Of a DNA stretch of 64,000 nucleotides, positions 405 to 63,400 are shown piece after piece. Below the pieces are notes generated by a model. That model had not been told where the DNA came from, made no database searches, and saw only the letters and a program-made list of their open reading frames with translations. The stretch covers positions 10,416,001 to 10,480,000 of the forward strand of contig CM035350.1 of NCBI GenBank assembly GCA_020137815.1. The letters are read 5' to 3'. The stretch is from Hormiphora californensis (Eukaryota > Animalia > Ctenophora). The number at the start of each line of letters is the position of its first letter. Position 1 is the first letter of the stretch. The position numbers were made by a program, and so were the translations under genes.

Positions 405-6326
<5,922 letters not shown>

Positions 6327-6775
6327 GGTTGCGAGGGGAGAGAGGAGCCCTGGCTAAAACAGAAAAAGTAGATGAGAATACACACATTTACTCAGAGATT
6401 GTGAGAGAGTCTTTCTAACTCAAGTGTTTAGTAAACAAGAGTTAGAAATCATCAGATGTCAGAGTAACAACAAAGTAGCACTGCTACTAGCAGAGAGGTA
6501 ATAACACTAACTGGAATGAAATGTCTACAAGAATTGTGAATTGTGCTCACTGAAGTAGTGCTGTAACAATGTGTTGCGTGACAAGTAGGGAGGGGACGAT
6601 AATCTAAACTTGAGTACTGCACTAGGCGTGATCTAGGGGGGCAGAGAGGGGCCCACTGCACTTGAGGAGCTAGGTGGGGGGGGGGGGGGCAGAGGGTGAG
6701 AGGGGTGGGAAATGGGAAACTACATTCTGAGTAAGTAACAAGCAGAGATTGACATTGTAAGTTAGAAACTGGAGA

Positions 6776-6780
<5 letters not shown>

Positions 6781-6861
<81 letters not shown>

Positions 6862-6910
6862 TCGTAAACATCGACTGACTGCTGCCGTATGGCCGGACGC
6901 TACTCTGAGA

Positions 6911-6996
<86 letters not shown>
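6781..6996. repeat. Inverted (GA)n / (TC)n microsatellite pair with ~55-bp spacer
   Basis: GA tract 6781-6857, TC tract ~6913-6996. Confidence 0.9.
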
Positions 6997-6999
<3 letters not shown>

Positions 7000-7479
7000 G
7001 TACTCGCTAGACGTAAACGTGTTACGAGCAAAGTGAAATGATAGAAGGGGTGAAGGGTAGTGAAGAGGAGAGGGGTGAAGAAGAGATAAGGCAATTTGAT
7101 TGTAAGACACGCAGAATCAGACACACACAGAGTAGTAGGAGAAAACTTGAAAACGATATTTATTTAAGCAAATCTCTTGTTTATGTAAGAGGAGCATAGT
7201 GCTACCCTCTAGTAACGTATAACTATCCTCTAGAGGCCGGTAATACAGAGATCAATAACCAGAATAACCGGTTCTCAGTCTGGATAAAATATTCAATACC
7301 CCCCCCCCCGCTCATCGGTATAATATAACACCTTACATCAAACATCCCCCCTAATTAATTCCATATTGTCTCACACAGAAGGTGGGTACATGCCCCCTCC
7401 CTCGGGTACATTTTATCAGAGTGTAGGTCTTCTCTTATATCGCCCCTTGCCTAAATCTCTTGACTTCCTCGGGTACATT

Positions 7480-7697
7480 TACGCTCCAGTTGCAGATTGG
7501 AAACTGGCACCAGGATTGGAAACTGGCACCAGGAGTTAGCTGGGAGAATCCTTATGAACCATGCTGCGTGCGACATCTTCGATGACTAGCAGGGATTTCG
7601 ATGTGAATTGCATTGAAAGTAGCGCCACACGCAGTGTCAGCAGCAGAGTGAATCTCTGGCATCAAGAACCTGGCTCCAGTAGTAAAATCTCTAACTG
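7480..7697. mobile_element. ~215-bp dispersed repeat (unclassified, SINE/MITE-like), copy 1
   Basis: Closely similar to 28604-28824 (acgctccagttgcagattggaaactg ... gaatctctggcatcaagaa ... tctctaactg). Confidence 0.7.
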
Positions 7698-10600
7698 GGC
7701 CCTAATCGGGGGGTAGGCCTTCTCTTATATCGACCCTGCCTGAATCTCTTGACCCCCATCTCAGATTTAACAAAGTTCCTGTAGGATTGTTCGTTATCCT
7801 CTCTTATCTTTCTTCTCAGTGCGTTGAAGTACCCATCCCAATCCGTTACATTCTTGTTTCTGTGGGTGTGCCTGTACACAGACACACTCGCTCCACTAAT
7901 GCAGTGGTCAGAGAGATAGCGTTTCACTGAGGACTCGGCCTGCCATGCCTCCATGGGAGTAGAGAACCACATACAATATAACCTGCATGGAGGAAGGAGT
8001 GAAGAGAGGAATCAATAAATTGGAGTGAAGAGAGGAATCAATAAATTGGAGTGAAGAGAGGAATCAATAAATTGGAGTGAAGAGAGGAATCAATAAATTG
8101 GAGTGAAGAGAGGAATCAATAAATTGGAGAGAGGAATCAATAAATTGGAGAGAGGAATCAATAAATTGGAGTGAAGAGAGGAATCAATAAATTGGAGTAA
8201 AGAGAGGAATCAATAAATTGGAGTGAAGAGAGGAGTCAATAAATTGGAGTGAAGAGAGGAATCAATAAATTGGAGAGAGGAATCAATAAATTGGAGAGAG
8301 GAATTAATAAATTGGAGTGAAGAGAGGAATCAATAAATTGGAGTGAAGAGAGGAATCAATTTAGGATGGAGGAAGGGGTGAAGAGAGGAATCAATTTAGG
8401 ATGGAGGAAGGGGTGAAGAGAGGAATCAATTTAGGATGGAGGAAGGAGTGAAGAGAGGAATCAATCACCATGTAGCTTCACTAGACCTAAATAAAATACA
8501 GATGCGGGTCAATATTGTATTTACCTTTTCTTTGAAATAACTTCAGCTGAGATAGGTTTCAGAGAGAGGTCTGCTATCATTGTATTGTAGAATGAGGGAG
8601 GGTTAGTCAGTGAGATATCTACTGAGAATGAAACTTCTTGGTTCACTTGGTGTAGAGACAACTCCAGTGCAGAGTTTACCACATCACCACCTTCTTCAGC
8701 TGTAACATTTGACTTGTTAATTATCTCTGTGGGTTAAATACATTGTTGTCCTGGAGATGTGATACTGTGGAGATGATACATTAGTCCTGCAACTAAAAAC
8801 AAGGTACTGTGGAGATGATACATGTGTGAGATTATAATACTCACACAAGAAGGATGTGGCCTGAACAACATCAACACTAACACTGTCCTCCACTAGCTTC
8901 AGCAGCTCCCTATCACTTTTATCTGCCACTATTACTTGACACTTGCCCTCCCTCCCAGCCCTCCCTGCACGACCCGCCCTGTGCATGTAGCTCTCCAAAT
9001 CAGGTGCTGGTTGAACCTGGATCACCTGTATAACAAGATGGGGGTATCAAGACGGGGGCGGGGGTTCTATTCTGCAGAACAAGATGGAGGTATCAAGACG
9101 GGGGGCGGGGGGTTCTATTCTGTATAACAAGATGGGGTTATATCAAGAGAGGGGCTGAACCTGGATCACCTGTATAACAAGATGGGGGTATCAAGACGGG
9201 GGGTGGGGGGGGGGGTTCTATTCTGCAGAACAAGATGTAGGTATCAAGAGAGGGGCTGAACCTGGATCACCTGCATAACAAGATGGGGGTATATCAAGAC
9301 GGGGGGCGGGGGGTTCTATTCTTCAGAACAAGATGGAGGTATCAAGAGAGGGGCTGAACCTGGATCACCTGCATAACAAGATGGGGGTATATCAAGACGG
9401 GGGGGGGGGGGGGTTCTATTCTGCAGAAAGGAACTGATATAATGATCGGCATCAGGAATATCTAGACCACGTGCCCCACGTACCTGTCTACAGTCAGGAA
9501 TATCTAGACCACGTGCCACGTACCTGTCTACAGTCAGGAATATCTAGACCACGTGCCACGTACCTGTCTACAGTCAGGAATATCTAGACCACGTGCCCCA
9601 CGTACCTGTCTACAGTCAGGAATATCTAGACCACGTGCCACGTACCTGTCTACAGTCAGGAATATCTAGACCACGTGCCACGTACCTGTCTACAGTCAGG
9701 AATATCTAGACCACGTGCCCCACGTACCTGTCTACAGTCAGGAATATCTAGACCACGTGCCACGTACCTGTCTACAGTCAGGAATATCTAGACCACGTGC
9801 CACGTACCTGTCTACAGTCAGGAATATCTAGACCACGTGCCACGTACCTGTCTACAGTCAGGAATATCTAGACCACGTGCCACGTACCTGTCTACAGTCA
9901 GGAATATCTAGACCACGTGCCACGTACCTGTCTACAGTCAGGAATATCTAGACCACGTGCCACGTACCTGTCTACAGTCAGGAATATCTAGACCACGTGC
10001 CACGTACCTGTCTACAGTCAGGAATATCTAGACCACGTGCCACGTACCTGTCTACAGTCAGGAATATCTAGACCACGTGCCACGTACCTGTCTACAGTCA
10101 GGAATATCTAGACCACGTGCCACGTACCTGTCTACAGTCAGGAATATCTAGACCACGTGCCACGTACCTGTCTACAGTCAGGAATATCTAGACCACGTGC
10201 CCACGTACCTGTCTACAGTCAGGAATATCTAGACCACGTGCCACGTACCTGTCTACAGTCAGGAATATCTAGACCACGTGCCCACGTACCTGTCTACAGT
10301 CAGGAATATCTAGACCACGTGCCCACGTACCTGTCTACAGTCAGGAATATCTAGACCACGTGCCACGTACCTGTCTACAGTCAGGAATATCTAGACCACG
10401 TGCCACGTACCTGTCTACAGTCAGGAATATCTAGACCACGTGCCACGTACCTGTCTACAGTCAGGAATATCTAGACCACGTGCCACGTACCTGTCTACAG
10501 TCAGGAATATCTAGACCACGTGCCACGTACCTGTCTACAGTCAGGAATATCTAGACCACGTGCCACGTACCTGTCTACAGTCAGGAATATCTAGACCACG

Positions 10601-51397: not shown

Positions 51398-51571
51398 CAC
51401 AATACTAGGATATAAACAGGTAAAATTAATTATGTATTACATTATCCAATAACTATAACCAATGATAACCAACGATAACCAATACCAAAAAGAACTGTTC
51501 ACACCAGTAACTCAAGTAGTACACCTACAGTTAGGGTTCACACACACTTGCAGTGCCTACTAGGGTGATCC

Positions 51572-52461
51572 CACAGTGGGTAATTTTCCTGTGTGACCCT
51601 ACAAAATGAAATATATGCCGTAGAAATCATATTTTTGGGCCAAAGTGACCTCTCCTAGACTAAAACCGTGCCTAGAAAGCGATTTAGACACTTTTCAGAG
51701 TGCTTAGATGCCACCTTTTTGAAATATTTGAAGAAAATTAATTAGCTAATTAATAACTTGATTAAGTAAAAACGTAACTTGGCTCAGGAACCACTTAGAG
51801 ATCCAATTTTTGATGCAAATTGTCCGGAATGTGCATGTTTATATAGGACTTATGAAGCAACATATGGCCTAAATCAAACCGTTTTTGAGTTATATGCCAT
51901 TTTAGATCAGGCATTTTACACATAAAAGCCGAAAAAGCGAAAAAATCGCTTAAATTTCGCACTTTAAATGGCTATAAAATTCAAACAGGGGAAAAGTGGG
52001 GAATTCCCGCGACACTACAATGTTCCAAATTGTCCATAGAGTCAGAATATCACAATGAAAGGGGTGGCGTCGAGCGGCGAAGTAACTTTTTTTGGTCATT
52101 CATATCCTAAAAATAGCCTAAATTTGACACGCGCAACCGAGAAAAAATAGTTAGAGTAAGACATATTGAACCCTAATCACTGAAAAGAACACAAAACAAC
52201 CATCACGATACAAAAGAAATGAAAGAAAAAGAATGAAAGGTATTGCAGTAGTGTGCACATGGATCTAAGCGAATTTCACAGCCAAAATGAAAACCCACAA
52301 TTTCCCTCAACTTCAAACTAACATAAAATCTGTAAATCTCAATATTTTTCGATGCGGTTTGTTTTACGTGAAACCTTGATTATTTTTACAATCGATATCC
52401 AAATTTCAGCAAATTTAAAGACAACTTTTTTTCCCACTTTGTAGGGTCGTTACCCACTGTG
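51572..52461. mobile_element. Non-autonomous Transib/RAG-like DNA transposon (890 bp) with asymmetric bipartite TIRs
   Basis: 5-bp TSD GATCC (51567-51571, 52462-52466); both ends CACAGTGGGTAA; second block GACCCTACAAA offset by 10 bp between the ends. Confidence 0.88.
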
Positions 52462-52514
52462 GATCCATAATGATTGACAGTTAGGGTCACACACCGTCCC
52501 TAGCTCTAATCCTG

Positions 52515-53136
52515 TTAGGTTTTGTTCTGAAAGAATTCTCTGACCTTCCTCGCCGCCTCGCTCTCTTCATTACACGGCTTCTTCGCCGCCTCCTCAGGCC
52601 CACCACTCACTACAACCTCATTACCACCACCACTCACTACAACCTCATCACCACCACCACTGGGACTAACAACTATCTCCTCTTCTATAATCTGAGCGTC
52701 ATTAGAGGTATCAGACTGCCGACTATAGCAGTCTTTAGAGTGTCGGGGCCAGTGTGTTGCCTGACAGTTTGCAGAACAGTATCTGATCTTAAAACACCCT
52801 CCACATTTGAACACAGCAGCACCACTACACATTAGACATGACTGTCGTTTTCTCTTAGGGGCCGGGAGGGATGCTCGAGGGGGTGGGACACGAAGTGCAA
52901 TGTCTTTCATCGTCTGTACATCAGTCTTTAGAACTGACACAGCGTTACCCAGGTATGAAATAGTACTCTCTAACACTGTTATACTAGTTGATATAGAGTC
53001 CAAGTTATCGATAAATTCCCTCCGACAGTTCAGGAGGAAATAGATGTTGGGTTCACTGTCGTCACTTCTTGGAGGTCGATTCTATCCGCCGAGGACGAGT
53101 ACATCCTGTTCCGCTGTTGTAGGGGCATGGGGACAT
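52515..53136 (-). CDS. Single-exon coiled-coil + zf-MYND protein, same architecture as 35650-36974; 5' part needs one indel
   Basis: CLMC..FKCGGCFKIRYCSANCQATHWPRHSKDC; frame open to ~53082; likely ATG at 53136 directly after tttgtag|cc. Confidence 0.75.
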
Positions 53137-60423: not shown

Positions 60424-63400
60424 GAGAGAGAGAGAGAGAGAGATAGATAAAGATAGACAGATTGGAGGATAACAATTAACAATTAACGAGATATGCCGTT
60501 AATTATGGCAGTTATAGCCTAAAGGTGTTACCCCCGTGACACCACATGGGCCCGGGCATCCAAACTAATTTATTTAATTGGTTTTTGGACTTAATTTCAC
60601 CCCACCCTATATTTCAGCAACTGTTTCCTACCAGTATATCGGGGGCACCAGGCCGATCATTCACATCCACTTTCTCTTCTAACAACTCAAACATGTTCTC
60701 CATGTCAATAAAGTTGTTTTGTATCATGCGATAGTAGGTTCCAAACCAATTTAGAGGCATATAGAGTTGTCTGATGTAGGAAACAAACAGAACAAAGTCA
60801 CCTGTGGGGGAGTTGTGTGTTACTAAAACAACAATTCTAACACAATTCATGGTGTTACTTGTTATATATGGGAAATATACACTATAGAACGATATGGAAC
60901 TCAATAACAGTGGGTAAATTAATTGTAGTTGAGTTTCAATGAAACGTACCGACAGTGAGGCGACCAGCGTGCACATCGTATATGATAAGGATAGAGCCAC
61001 CCAGAGTGCCCATGAATATAATCACATTCTGCACCCCGTTCAGAAGGGAGAGAGAACTAACAGACAAGTACTCAGACCTCAGATAGACCTTAATCATCTT
61101 GCAAAACCTACAGAAGTTAGTTTTTAGTGCAAATACATTGTTATGTTCTAACCCCCCTTTCCGGGCGGGGCGCACGAAACACAGTCTAGCTAGGCAACAA
61201 ATACAACGATTAAAAGTAAAACAGAGGGTATATCTAACAGGGGGGATATCTCACCTGTTAGATTCGTATTTCTCTGCACCAAAGTACTTGACAGTTTCAA
61301 AGTTAAGTAGACTGTCAACAGCAAGTGCTTTAGTCGTGTTCATGGATTGGATTCATATCTCTCCTGTATTTAGTTCTCCACTCAGTTAGAACCACTGTTA
61401 TTACTGGGGGGAAGAGAGAGAGAGAGAGAGAGATGAGGAATACTTTATAGGAGACCTTGTAATGAATCTAATGGGTTAGACAATACTCATTTAACTAACC
61501 AATTAACTTCCTATTTGACTGTGTGCTGTACTAACCCATGTAGTAGGCCATAGGTAACGAATATGATCAGCCCATACCAGACGTTGAATGCAACAACAAA
61601 GTATACTATAGCAATGGTCAAATCCACCAGACAAGGAGCAATGTTGAACAAAATATAACTGCCGCGAGAGGGAGGGATGTTATATCTGTGTTATAACCCA
61701 GATTATATGATCGGTACTGGAAATATAGACTACTACTACTGTGAGACTGTTGTATAACTTGTAAACTGCACTTACTTGAGAAGGTTTGATATAGCACTAC
61801 CAGACCTATCTAGAATCTTCATTACTTCCCCTGTCTTACGAGACAAATGCCAGCCAATAGATAAACTGGGGGGGGGGGGGGTAAGGGAGAGGTGGAAATT
61901 TGTCTGATGAATCTGGAAGCATGTGAAGCATGTGAAGAAGGCACTATGATAGGAAGGCAGGACTGGTTGATGGTGGGGAGAAGGGGGGAGGGGTGGGGCT
62001 ATAACTCTGGGGGTGGGGAGAGTGGGTGGGGTAGATCACTAACTTGTGGAGATGGTCAAATAGACGGGTATTAACACGCTGGGTTGAGTACTAACTTGTG
62101 GAGATGGTCAAATAGACGGGTATTAACACGCTGGGTTGAGTACTGAGTGACACTGAGCCATAACTGGGAACGTAGGGTGCCAATCAAACCTCCAGATCCC
62201 AAACCTACAAGAAGGAGATATATCATCTATACAGATTACCAAACCTAAGAGGTAAAATAAGAGTAGTCTCTTTTGTGGTGTAACTACACAGTGCTGCGAG
62301 GGGCCAGTTTGCTTTTTGAGTATTTTAGTCAAAAAACTAACTTTTGATATTTGGTTCAGCTCGAAGACCCGGACCAGATGGACTATTCAAAAAGCGCCTT
62401 TGCCCACACCTTCCTGGAGAAAAATGAGGTTAACTTTTTGCCCAAAACTGGTGTTAACCTCAATAAATCATAGACTGCAAGTCATAAGACCATGAAGCCG
62501 GTTCTAATAGTTAAATCTCGCCAGGGGTATAGTTTGTATGTAATTTGACAATCCTAAACCAAGCCATTGGCAAAATTTTAGAGGTTAACATTATTTCCGA
62601 AAAGTTACATTTTTGCGATTATTTCGTAATAATTTCGTCAGGTCTAGCGGAATTTCCAAACGAGATATCTTAGAACTGGGCCTTGTAATTTGGTAAGAAA
62701 GGTCCTAAGTAACTGAATTAACATTTTGAAGGGAAAAATGGGGTGTGGTTTTTATTTTATTGAGGTTAACATGCTTAAAAAGTGTAAAAAAAGTGAAATA
62801 TTACACCTTTTAAGCATGTTAACCTCAATAAAATAAAAACCACACCCCATTTTTCCCTTCAAAATGTTAATTCAGTTACTTAGGACCTTTCTTACCAAAT
62901 TACAAGGCCCAGTTCTAAGATATCTCGTTTGGAAATTCCGCTAGACCTGACGAAATTATTACGAAATAATCGCAAAAATGTAACTTTTCGGAAATATTGT
63001 TAACCTCTAAAATTTTGCCAATGACTTGGTTTAGGATTGTCAAATTACATACAAACTATACCCCTGGCGAGATTTAACTATTAGAACCGGCTTCATGGTC
63101 TTATGACTTGCAGTCTATGATTTATTGAGGTTAACACCAGTTTTGGGCAAAAAGTTAACCTCATTTTTCTCCAGGAAGGTGTGGGCAAAGGCGCTTTTTG
63201 AATAGTCCATCTGGTCCGGGTCTTCGAGCTGAACCAAATATCAAAAGTTAGTTTTTTGACTAAAATACTCGATATTCTAACTGAACAAAAGTGGCATTTC
63301 GCAGCACTGTGAACTAATTGAACTGTTATCGCAGGTTGTTCTTGCTGCAATCAGTTAACACATCTTGGTGAGTGTAGTCTGTTTGTGTTATAGTCTGTTT

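What the first reader, a model, noticed from the sequence alone, without database searches (positions are those of the whole stretch)
51567..52466. Transib/RAG-like element with RSS-like 12/22 end asymmetry
Seen: left end CACAGTG (51572-51578) + 22-bp spacer + ACAAAATGA (51601-51609); right end read inward CACAGTG (52461-52455) + 12-bp spacer + ACAAAGTGG (52442-52434); 5-bp TSD GATCC. Established: V(D)J RSSs are CACAGTG-12/23-ACAAAAACC, RAG and Transib transposition give 5-bp TSDs, and some Transib/RAG-like elements have asymmetric bipartite TIRs. Nonamer matches here are 6/9 and 5/9, and given the indel noise 22 could be 23. Inference: the genome may encode, or recently encoded, a RAG1-like transposase with a one-turn/two-turn pairing rule.
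Basis: partly seen in the sequence, partly recalled or inferred. Interest (0 to 1): 0.85.

Follow-up and report, generated by a model that had tools for sequence, protein, structure and literature searches.

The report
Active comb-jelly Transib transposon, 12/22 ends
This is a small, recently mobile, non-coding Transib-type jumping gene whose two ends mimic the short- and long-spacer recombination signals of antibody genes. It is a good new example, but this end design has been published for Transib elements, including comb-jelly ones.

Summary
Window 51572-52461 is an 890-bp element with CACAGTG termini and a GATCC duplication. The heptamer-to-ACAAA distance is 22 nt on the left and 12 nt on the right.

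- **Not a private indel.** All 10 genomic copies (97.5-100% identical) have the same long and short ends. All 9 complete copies have 5-bp duplications.
- **Other families show it too.** A related family (L015) and an unrelated one in this window (62287-63311) have exactly the same 10-bp end difference.
- **The insertion is polymorphic.** Contigs from two samples join 51566 to 52462, which is the empty site.
- **Transposases are present.** The genome, probably Hormiphora californensis, has two intact TIR-less Transib/RAG1-like ORFs. One model matches mouse RAG1 at Z 31.8. There are also decayed Transib fragments with a CCGHC tail next to homologous ends. No RAG2 was found.
- **No cognate autonomous copy was found.**

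Novelty is limited. Kapitonov and Jurka (2005) described RSS12/RSS23-like Transib ends. Tao et al. (2022) show a 13/23 pair for Mnemiopsis MleTransib_2823 and state that all Subgroup I Transibs have asymmetric ends. Another agent of this scan reached the same verdict on other DNA of this genome (s1-872972).

A pairing rule remains inferred, not shown. Verdict: a new member of a known kind, interest about 0.4.

The parts
51567..51571 (.). Left copy of the 5-bp target-site duplication, GATCC.
   Evidence: The empty-site contigs carry a single copy (joint 51566->52462, 'both' = 5).
51572..51609 (+). Long (RSS23-like) end. Heptamer 51572-51578; terminal box 51572-51583; 11 extra nt at 51584-51594; inner box GACCCTACAAAATGA at 51595-51609. 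The heptamer-to-ACAAAATGA spacer is 22 nt.
   Evidence: I4, I5. Identical in all 10 copies except one T/C site in the spacer.
51610..52433 (.). Non-coding interior. The largest ORF is 55 aa and there is no Rfam match. Segment 51823-51873 is a piece of a high-copy repeat.
   Evidence: One search gives more than 40 other loci matching query positions 248-338. One search shows 5-6-fold higher depth over 51772-51933.
52434..52461 (-). Short (RSS12-like) end, read inward on the minus strand. Heptamer 52461-52455; terminal box 52461-52450; 1 nt at 52449; inner box GACCCTACAAAGTGG at 52448-52434. The spacer to ACAAAGTGG is 12 nt.
52462..52466 (.). Right copy of the target-site duplication, GATCC.
62282..63316 (+). 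A second, sequence-unrelated Transib-type family in the same window. The element spans 62287-63311 (1025 bp) and is a near-perfect palindrome with TSD AACTA and terminal box CACAGTGCTGCGA. The right end is 10 nt longer than the left before the shared inner sequence.
   Evidence: three complete copies, all short/long; the self-alignment 19-997 onto 997-19 is offset by 10.

Best explanation
**What it is.** Window 51572-52461 is a non-autonomous (MITE-like) member of the Transib superfamily of cut-and-paste DNA transposons. The genome is most probably that of the ctenophore Hormiphora californensis. The element carries no gene and must be moved in trans by a Transib (RAG1-core-like DDE) transposase.

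**How it moves (inferred by homology).** By homology with HzTransib and RAG, the enzyme nicks at the outer edge of each CACAGTG heptamer. It forms hairpins on the flanking DNA and releases the element with 3'-OH ends. It then inserts the element with a 5-bp stagger, which produces the observed duplications.

**End structure.** Each end is bipartite: a terminal box (heptamer plus 4-6 nt) and an inner A/T-rich box. The boxes lie one helical turn (10 nt) further apart at one end than at the other. Measured heptamer-to-ACAAA, the spacers are 12-13 versus 22-23 nt.

**Why the asymmetry is probably functional.** The long/short design is conserved across at least three families here and in the published Mnemiopsis autonomous element. 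I therefore take it to be a functional requirement, with about even odds: one long and one short end are synapsed by a transposase dimer, analogous to the 12/23 rule but without RAG2.

**Shown versus inferred.** Shown: element anatomy, family-wide asymmetry, 5-bp duplications, insertion polymorphism, and presence of Transib transposase genes and remnants. Inferred: which enzyme moves it, the nick-hairpin chemistry, and the pairing rule.
For: **Anatomy and copies**
- Exact anatomy.
- Ten copies, 97.5-100% identical, in two subfamilies. The window copy matches L003 at every aligned base (L003 is 2 bp longer).
- 5-bp duplications in 9 of 9 complete copies, a different sequence at each site.
- Every copy has one long and one short end; the reversed control gave 0.

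**Mobility**
- Empty-site contigs in runs X1, X5 and X6 (two samples) skip exactly 895 bp, which is 890 bp plus one duplication copy.

**Other families**
- Family 3 (L015:780-1942, TSD CTGAG) has terminal box CACAGTGGGAA and inner box GAGGTGGACAAATTTTTT, separated by 2 versus 12 nt.
- Family 3 shares a 167-bp internal segment (79% identity) with family 1, in the same polarity relative to the long end.
- Family 2 (62287-63311) has an unrelated sequence but the same 10-nt difference.
- Genome-wide, ends with CACAGTGG...AGGTGGNCA fall only at two offsets, giving total lengths of 22-23 or 33 nt. There were 25 hits against 1 in the control.

**Link to a transposase**
- L053:4015-4641 encodes a 209-aa C-terminal fragment containing the catalytic Glu region and a CCGHC tail. 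It hits Pfam RAG1 (E 1e-5), HzTransib 6pqn (E 2e-10), RAG1 (E 1e-4) and BbRAG1L (E 2e-3).
- That fragment is followed 712 bp later by a short-type end at L053:5353.
- L055 has a long-type end 695 bp upstream of a similar fragment.

**Intact ORFs**
- Two intact Transib ORFs, an open frame of 949 aa and one of 677 aa, keep the D, D, E, CxxC and Hx4H residues.
- The AlphaFold model of the 677-aa protein has pLDDT 79. It aligns to mouse RAG1 459-1008 at Z 31.8 (rmsd 2.9 A over 490 residues) and to HzTransib at Z 29.5.

**Literature**
- PMC1131882 describes RSS12/RSS23-like 5' and 3' ends in five Transib families.
- The PMC9435367 supplement shows the MleTransib_2823 5' TIR with a 23-nt spacer and the 3' TIR with a 13-nt spacer before ACATTAAG.
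Against: - No autonomous copy with these exact ends exists in the assembly.
- The CCGHC-type lineage that is physically linked to homologous ends survives only as fragments.
- The two intact ORFs have no recognisable TIRs or duplications within 3-4 kb. They lack both the CCGHC tail and a GRPR/K motif. So the mobilising enzyme is unidentified.
- Families 1 and 3 share ancestry. The asymmetry therefore counts as about two or three independent observations, not many.
- The partner ends of two further end types (a long end with 14 copies and a short end with 7) could not be retrieved.
- Matches to the RSS nonamer itself are weak (6/9 and 5/9). '12/22' depends on where the inner box is taken to start; only the 10-nt difference is robust.
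Confidence: 0.85

Rival explanations
1. It is a Transib MITE as above, but the 10-nt end difference is a neutral legacy. An indel in an ancestral element is tolerated because the transposase reads only the terminal box, so there is no pairing rule.
For: - Families 1 and 3, and the L053/L055 ends, share homologous spacers, so they inherited the asymmetry from a common ancestor.
- All copies within a family descend from one master.
- Many published Transib families have symmetric RSS23-like ends (PMC1131882; PMC9435367 says Subgroup II has both kinds).
- I recall no published demonstration that any Transib transposase enforces a 12/23-type pairing rule. This rests on my own knowledge; the HzTransib structure paper could not be read.
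Against: - The difference is exactly 10 nt in family 2, whose terminal and inner sequences are unrelated to families 1 and 3.
- In family 2 the two arms are 97% identical over 979 bp, yet they differ precisely in the spacer.
- Mnemiopsis, a distant ctenophore, keeps 13/23 with the same 5'-long / 3'-short polarity.
- The inner boxes are conserved between the two ends of each family, which suggests that they are read.
Confidence: 0.4
2. The element derives from a RAG-like (RAG1L plus RAG2L) transposon rather than from Transib.
For: - The heptamer is the canonical CACAGTG, the duplications are 5 bp, and the TIRs are asymmetric, as in some RAGL elements.
- The transposase fragment hits Pfam RAG1 and carries a CCGHC tail like invertebrate RAG1L.
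Against: - There is no RAG2 (PF03089) match above noise in the whole genome (best E 0.2).
- The fragment is closer to HzTransib (E 2e-10) than to RAG1 or BbRAG1L.
- Its catalytic-Glu region (EGG.EACNKLLRRYRTRLSRK) is almost identical to the Mnemiopsis Transib protein printed just above the MleTransib_3931 figure legend in the supplement.
- CCGHC tails also occur in Transib (PMC9435367; 14 of 40 homologues).
Confidence: 0.03
3. It is not a Transib-type transposon at all. It could be a chance inverted repeat, a solo LTR, another TIR superfamily, or an assembly artefact.
For: The element has no coding capacity of its own.
Against: - There are ten dispersed copies with precise, site-specific 5-bp duplications.
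- An empty-site allele is seen in independent samples.
- The termini are CAC...GTG, not TG...CA.
- To my knowledge, 5-bp duplications combined with CACAGTG termini are diagnostic of Transib/RAGL among eukaryotic TIR superfamilies.
- Homologous ends lie beside Transib transposase remnants.
Confidence: 0.02

Closest known systems
MleTransib_2823 of the ctenophore Mnemiopsis leidyi (Tao et al. 2022, PMC9435367, Supplementary Data 2)
   Same: - The terminal sequence is CACAGTGGG...
- Duplications are 5 bp.
- The 5' end has a 23-nt spacer and the 3' end a 13-nt spacer before a conserved inner box (ACATTAAG), a 10-nt difference.
- The transposase has the same catalytic-Glu region and a CCGHC tail, as in the L053 and L055 fragments here.
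- The polarity is the same: 5' long, 3' short.
   Different: - The element here is non-autonomous, in another ctenophore order, and has a different inner box (GACCCTACAAA).
- It is demonstrably polymorphic, so recently mobile.
- No intact cognate transposase copy is in the assembly.
Transib5 (Drosophila melanogaster) and Transib2_AG, TransibN1-N3_AG (Anopheles gambiae) (Kapitonov and Jurka 2005, PMC1131882)
   Same: These are Transib families whose two termini resemble RSS12 and RSS23. They have 5-bp duplications, and three of them are non-autonomous.
   Different: - The published polarity is 5' = RSS12-like and 3' = RSS23-like. The ctenophore remnants suggest the opposite.
- The insect consensus heptamer is CACAATG and the nonamer is A-rich.
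- Here the heptamer is exactly CACAGTG and the inner box is family-specific.
HzTransib (Helicoverpa zea), the structurally solved Transib transposase (PDB 6pqn and related entries)
   Same: It has the same fold and catalytic residues as the two intact ORFs here. Nick-hairpin cut-and-paste with 5-bp duplications is the mechanistic model used here.
   Different: - Sequence identity is only about 17-25%.
- The ORFs here have roughly 140 extra N-terminal residues. These include three helices in the position of the RAG1 nonamer-binding domain; this is suggestive only.
V(D)J recombination signal sequences and RAG1/RAG2
   Same: The heptamer CACAGTG is identical. The ends are bipartite with about 12 versus 22-23 nt spacers. 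RAG transposition makes 5-bp duplications. The RAG1-core fold of the genome's transposase matches at Z 31.8.
   Different: - No RAG2 is present.
- The nonamer matches only 5-6 of 9 positions.
- These are transposon ends, not a domesticated recombination system.
- Enforcement of the pairing rule is untested.
ProtoRAG (amphioxus, 27/31), AanRAGL (Aureococcus, 4/13) and PflRAGL-A asymmetric TIRs
   Same: They have bipartite conserved elements separated by unequal spacers and 5-bp duplications. For ProtoRAG the asymmetry and spacer length are experimentally required (PMC8289069).
   Different: Those elements encode RAG2L. Their spacer differences are 4 nt (ProtoRAG) or 9 nt (AanRAGL) rather than 10, and their sequences are unrelated.

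Membership tests
Transib superfamily (non-autonomous member) | 5-bp target-site duplications | tested here: met
   Nine of nine complete family-1 copies have them, and so do families 2 and 3. The empty site carries a single GATCC.
Transib superfamily (non-autonomous member) | Termini starting with CAC and a heptamer resembling CACA(A/G)TG | tested here: met
   CACAGTG is at both ends of all copies of three families.
Transib superfamily (non-autonomous member) | Bipartite ends of about 38 bp: a heptamer, a variable spacer and a conserved A/T-rich inner element | tested here: met
   The terminal and inner boxes are conserved between the two ends of each family, and the spacers differ.
Transib superfamily (non-autonomous member) | A cognate RAG1-core-like DDE transposase without RAG2, found with the same ends | tested here: inconclusive
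   Transposase remnants lie 695-712 bp from homologous, but not identical, ends. Two intact Transib ORFs exist but have no TIRs. No autonomous copy carries the family-1 ends.
Subgroup I Transib (Tao et al. 2022) | CTT1 (CCGHC) C-terminal tail and asymmetric TIRs | tested here: met
   This applies to the remnant lineage only. The CCGHC motif is in the L053 and L055 fragments, and long- and short-type ends lie beside them. The alpha11-alpha12 region could not be assessed because the fragments lack it.
RAG-like (RAGL) transposon | A RAG2-like kelch gene paired with RAG1L | tested here: not met
   A PF03089 search of the whole genome gave a best E of 0.2, under the cut-off.
12/23-rule system | Two end types whose spacers differ by about one helical turn | tested here: met
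   The difference is 10 nt in families 1, 2 and 3. Offsets are bimodal genome-wide.
12/23-rule system | Cleavage or synapsis requires one end of each type | not testable with these tools
   This needs cleavage and transposition assays. The only comparative support is that every mobilised element seen has one end of each type.
12/23-rule system | A nonamer-binding domain with a GRPR/K motif in the transposase | tested here: not met
   Neither intact ORF has a GRP motif. Three helices (residues 79-135, pLDDT 55-81) precede the DDBD. They align to RAG1 402-459 only in two high-rmsd alignments, so an NBD-like module is possible but unproven.

The most novel reading that the evidence does not exclude
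In this ctenophore every mobilised Transib family obeys a strict one-helical-turn difference between its two ends. Yet the genome has no RAG2, and its only intact Transib transposases lack both the CCGHC clamp and the GRPR/K nonamer-binding motif. If the asymmetry is enforced, a 12/23-type pairing rule would be an intrinsic, ancestral property of the RAG1-like transposase alone. It would be readable from a currently active natural system in one of the earliest-branching animal lineages. The TIR-less intact ORFs might then be immobilised 'source' genes that drive the MITEs.
Probability: 0.35. Interest if true: 0.6.

Novelty: new member of a known kind. Interest (0 to 1): 0.4.

Why it matters
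The origin of the 12/23 rule of V(D)J recombination is still debated. One view is that it arose during RAG domestication. The other is that it was inherited from transposon ends (Kapitonov and Jurka 2005; Yakovenko 2021; Tao 2022; Martin 2023).

This genome adds several things:
- three Transib families with an exact 10-nt end asymmetry and the canonical CACAGTG heptamer;
- insertions that are still polymorphic between individuals;
- no RAG2.

That makes it a convenient natural substrate set for testing whether a Transib transposase alone discriminates long from short ends. It does not change the current picture, because the same design is already published for ctenophore Transibs.

Tried and rejected
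- **TIRs around the intact ORFs.** I searched for TIRs and duplications around the two intact ORFs in three ways: the repeat finder, a CAC/GTG plus duplication scan, and blastn-short of upstream against downstream. Nothing convincing was found within 3-4 kb.
- **An autonomous partner at C2.** The 4.7-kb copy with family-3 ends at C2:8824072-8828783 looked like a candidate. The 1.9 kb I hold has no ORF over 91 aa, and no transposase query hits it, so it is probably a nested insertion.
- **Pfam on the intact ORFs.** It gave no RAG1 hit at E < 0.1. PDB sequence and structure comparisons were needed instead.
- **Word-indexed protein search.** It returned a single distant hit. The exhaustive search gave 583 homologues, none above 41% identity.
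- **CCGHC downstream of the stop codons.** I looked for one, which would indicate a recent truncation. None is present.
- **Short partner of the 14-copy long end.** A search by its inner box found only long ends.
- **The Mnemiopsis TIR in this genome.** A 12-nt identity (GATCCATAATGA) links this element's right flank to the spacer of the Mnemiopsis 3' TIR. That TIR does not occur elsewhere in this genome at up to 3 mismatches. I leave this as an unexplained coincidence.
- **MAFFT alignment of all ends.** It did not place the 10-nt gap sensibly, so spacings were counted by hand.
- **The HzTransib structure paper.** PMC6872938 is not held.
- **Further loci.** I did not try to obtain further loci by another tool. 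The 'own genome' searches are also exhausted.

Full report
**1. The observation**

Reading window 51400-52650 confirms every coordinate in the finding.
- GATCC lies at 51567-51571 and again at 52462-52466.
- CACAGTG lies at 51572-51578, and its reverse complement at 52455-52461.
- ACAAAATGA lies 22 nt inside the left heptamer, and ACAAAGTGG 12 nt inside the right one.

The repeat finder gives a description that does not depend on the weak nonamer matches. A 12-13-nt terminal box (CACAGTGGGTAA) is perfectly complementary between the ends. A 14-nt inner box (GACCCTACAAARTG) is 93% complementary. The two boxes are 11 nt apart on the left and 1 nt apart on the right. The interior has no ORF longer than 55 aa and no Rfam match.

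**2. It is a family trait, not a private indel**

The window's genome (110.7 Mb, 45 contigs) holds ten copies at 97.5-100% identity.
- They fall into two subfamilies. The window copy matches the copy on contig 10 at every aligned base; that copy is 2 bp longer.
- All nine complete copies are flanked by identical 5-bp direct repeats, different at every site: GATCC, GACGT, CAGTG, GTTAG, ATCCA, TGCAG, ATCAC, GTGTT and GAGAG.
- A pattern search allowing 0-30 nt between the two boxes found 20 ends and none in the reversed control. Every element has one long and one short end.
- Two diverged solitary left ends (88% and 82% identity) are also of the long type.

**3. The insertion is polymorphic**

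A joint from 51566 to 52462 appeared in three runs from two samples. It skips 895 bp, and 5 letters fit either side. One 304-nt contig has 103 nt on its shorter side.

This is the empty site with a single GATCC. The element is therefore a recent, precise insertion that is not fixed.

Loose ends at both boundaries run into sequences that match none of the ten reference flanks. This hints at further non-reference insertions. I did not pursue it.

**4. Other families show the same 10-nt difference**

I followed a note from this scan (s1-875202) and my own scan of the window for CACNNTG termini with 5-bp duplications.

*Family 2.* The element at 62287-63311 (TSD AACTA) is a near-perfect 1-kb palindrome.
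- Its terminal box (CACAGTGCTGCGA) and inner sequence are unrelated to family 1.
- Its right end is exactly 10 nt longer.
- Three complete copies all have one short and one long end.
- A variant copy shows the same inner box (GTTTGCTTTTT) 13 or 23 nt from the heptamer.
- The arms are 97% identical over 979 bp, with the register shifted by 10. The asymmetry is therefore confined to the spacer.

*Family 3.* This family turned up among the loci already fetched (L015:780-1942, TSD CTGAG).
- Terminal box CACAGTGGGAA and inner box GAGGTGGACAAATTTTTT are separated by 2 or 12 nt. That is 13 and 23 nt from the heptamer to ACAAATTTT.
- It shares a 167-bp internal segment (79% identity) with family 1, in the same polarity relative to the long end. 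The asymmetry therefore predates their divergence.

*Genome-wide.* Ends of the type CACAGTGG...AGGTGGNCA occur 25 times, against 1 in the control. They fall at only two spacings, giving total lengths of 22-23 or 33 nt.

**5. Link to a transposase**

*Fragments.* A Pfam RAG1 search of the genome gave one marginal hit. It proved to be a 209-aa open frame (L053:4015-4641).
- It carries the catalytic-Glu region and a CCGHC tail.
- It matches HzTransib (E 2e-10), RAG1 (E 1e-4) and BbRAG1L (E 2e-3).
- A short-type end (CACAGTGG, then AGGTGGACA) lies 712 bp downstream.
- At a second remnant (L055), a long-type end lies 695 bp upstream of a similar fragment.
- So in gene orientation the 5' end is long and the 3' end is short. 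This lineage survives only as fragments.

*Intact ORFs.* Two intact, intronless, single-copy ORFs on contig 3 are also Transib-like. One is an open frame of 949 aa and the other of 677 aa, and they are 42% identical.
- They match HzTransib at E 1e-11 and keep the D, D, E, CxxC and Hx4H residues.
- An AlphaFold model of the 677-aa protein has pLDDT 79.3 and pTM 0.77.
- Its residues 141-677 align to mouse RAG1 459-1008 at Z 31.8, rmsd 2.9 A over 490 residues. HzTransib gives Z 29.5 and BbRAG1L Z 26.6.
- These ORFs have no recognisable TIRs or duplications within 3-4 kb, no CCGHC tail and no GRPR/K motif.
- Three helices at residues 79-135 sit where the RAG1 nonamer-binding domain would be. They align to it only in two loose superpositions, which I regard as suggestive only.

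*RAG2.* No RAG2 homologue was found.

**6. Organism**

The size (110.7 Mb), 45 contigs and about 13 chromosome-sized pieces fit the published Hormiphora californensis assembly, which has 110 Mb, 44 scaffolds and 13 chromosomes (PMC8527503). Holders of the sequence include marine metagenome runs. This is an inference, because run and organism names were coded.

**7. Comparison with what is known**

- Kapitonov and Jurka (2005, PMC1131882) reported that several Transib families have termini resembling RSS12 and RSS23. They said the 12/23 rule could be derived from them.
- Yakovenko et al. (2021, PMC8355894) built a hypothesis on this.
- Tao et al. (2022, PMC9435367) found Transibs in ctenophores. 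They state that all Subgroup I Transibs, which carry the CTT1/CCGHC tail, have asymmetric TIRs.
- Their supplement prints the ends of MleTransib_2823 from Mnemiopsis. Both start CACAGTGGGGAT. The inner box ACATTAAG lies 23 nt from the heptamer at the 5' end and 13 nt at the 3' end.
- A Mnemiopsis Transib protein printed beside the MleTransib_3931 figure legend has a catalytic-Glu region that almost exactly matches the fragment here.

The architecture, polarity and transposase type found here are therefore those of a published ctenophore Transib clade. Another agent of this scan reached the same verdict on a different element of this genome (s1-872972).

**8. Mechanism and its status**

*Shown:*
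- a non-coding element with conserved bipartite, length-asymmetric ends;
- precise 5-bp duplications;
- a polymorphic insertion;
- Transib transposase genes and remnants in the genome, and no RAG2.

*Inferred from HzTransib and RAG biochemistry (established knowledge):*
- nick-hairpin excision at the heptamer edge;
- 5-bp staggered integration.

*Inferred from conservation only (about even odds):*
- that one long and one short end must be paired.

The main rival is that the asymmetry is a tolerated legacy. It is weakened by family 2 and by Mnemiopsis, but it is not excluded.

The mobilising enzyme is unknown. It could be a cognate CCGHC-type copy missing from the assembly, or one of the two TIR-less ORFs acting in trans.

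**9. Limits**

- I therefore could not fetch the diverged relatives of family 2, the partner ends of the two orphan end types, or the left part of the 4.7-kb family-3 copy. I did not try to obtain them by another tool.
- No step needed referral.

**10. Verdict**

The element is a new member of a known kind. It is a clean, currently active example, useful as a test system, but it is not a new principle. Interest 0.4.

Noticed in passing
window 62282-63316: A second Transib-type family. It is a 1025-bp near-perfect palindrome with TSD AACTA and terminal box CACAGTGCTGCGA. Its right end is 10 nt longer than its left. There are at least 4 near-identical copies. Dozens of loci are 68-76% identical to its sub-terminal arms, which suggests a large palindromic MITE group.
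   Followed up: partly
L063:4197-7043 (minus strand; C3:8638196-8641042) and L064:4724-6754 (minus strand; C3:3559783-3561654): Two intact, intronless, single-copy Transib/RAG1-core-like ORFs (an open frame of 949 aa and one of 677 aa). Their catalytic and zinc ligands are complete, but they have no TIRs or duplications nearby and no CCGHC tail. They may be immobilised source genes or domesticated genes. The 949-aa protein has an N-terminal RanBP-type zinc ribbon (Pfam E 0.007, below the cut-off).
   Followed up: partly
window 51823-51873 (inside the element); L017-L030: A 50-80-bp piece of the element's interior recurs at more than 40 other loci (81-94% identity), often as clustered inverted copies about 150-170 bp apart. 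Read depth over it is 5-6 times that of the rest of the element. The element seems to have captured, or shares, part of another high-copy repeat.
   Followed up: no
window 51527-51545 and 52477-52494; also 51590-51601: The target site is flanked on both sides by ACAGTTAGGGT(T)CACACAC. The 12-mer TAGGGTCACACA in the right flank is the exact reverse complement of TGTGTGACCCTA, which spans the spacer and inner box of the left end. I estimate about 0.06 such 12-mer matches by chance in this 1.45-kb region. Possible target preference or coincidence.
   Followed up: no
window 52455-52473: The right junction (CACTGTG followed by GATCCATAATGA) shares a 12-nt string with the spacer of the published Mnemiopsis MleTransib_2823 3' TIR. 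That TIR occurs nowhere else in this genome at up to 3 mismatches. Unexplained and probably coincidental.
   Followed up: partly
G000 C2, C3, C5-C8, C10, C13, C16; L055:2389-2438: An orphan long-type end (CACAGTGGCCTTTTTCATGGGAGTAGGTGGTCA) occurs in 14 copies. An orphan short-type end (CACAGTGGTTTTTAGGTGGACA) occurs in 7 copies. No partner was found within a few kb by the patterns tried. If they are the two ends of one family, the spacers would be exactly 23 and 12.
   Followed up: partly
L057:2140-2987 (C4, about 6.553 Mb): An 848-bp element with identical inverted ends of at least 70 bp containing CACAGTGGAGGGTTTTCC. Its flanks are also inverted, so the repeat extends beyond the heptamer. 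It is a different kind of foldback element lying near a Transib transposase fragment.
   Followed up: no
L010 (C4:7355938-7357851) and C2:8824072-8828783: One family-1 copy carries an insertion of about 1 kb at position 669. One family-3 copy is 4.7 kb instead of 1.16 kb. These are probably nested insertions.
   Followed up: partly
window 52627-52885: Contigs from a marine oligo-dT metatranscriptome (run X7) match this stretch at 95-99% identity. It lies about 170 bp to the right of the insertion, in a region of 27-bp coding-like repeats. The element therefore sits close to an expressed exon.
   Followed up: no
L064 (reverse-complement coordinates 6204-9224): A 1007-aa open frame of a LINE-type endonuclease/reverse transcriptase lies about 930 bp downstream of the 677-aa Transib ORF. 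A 40-bp palindromic satellite (TGGATCAGATCACAT...) lies upstream of that ORF.
   Followed up: no
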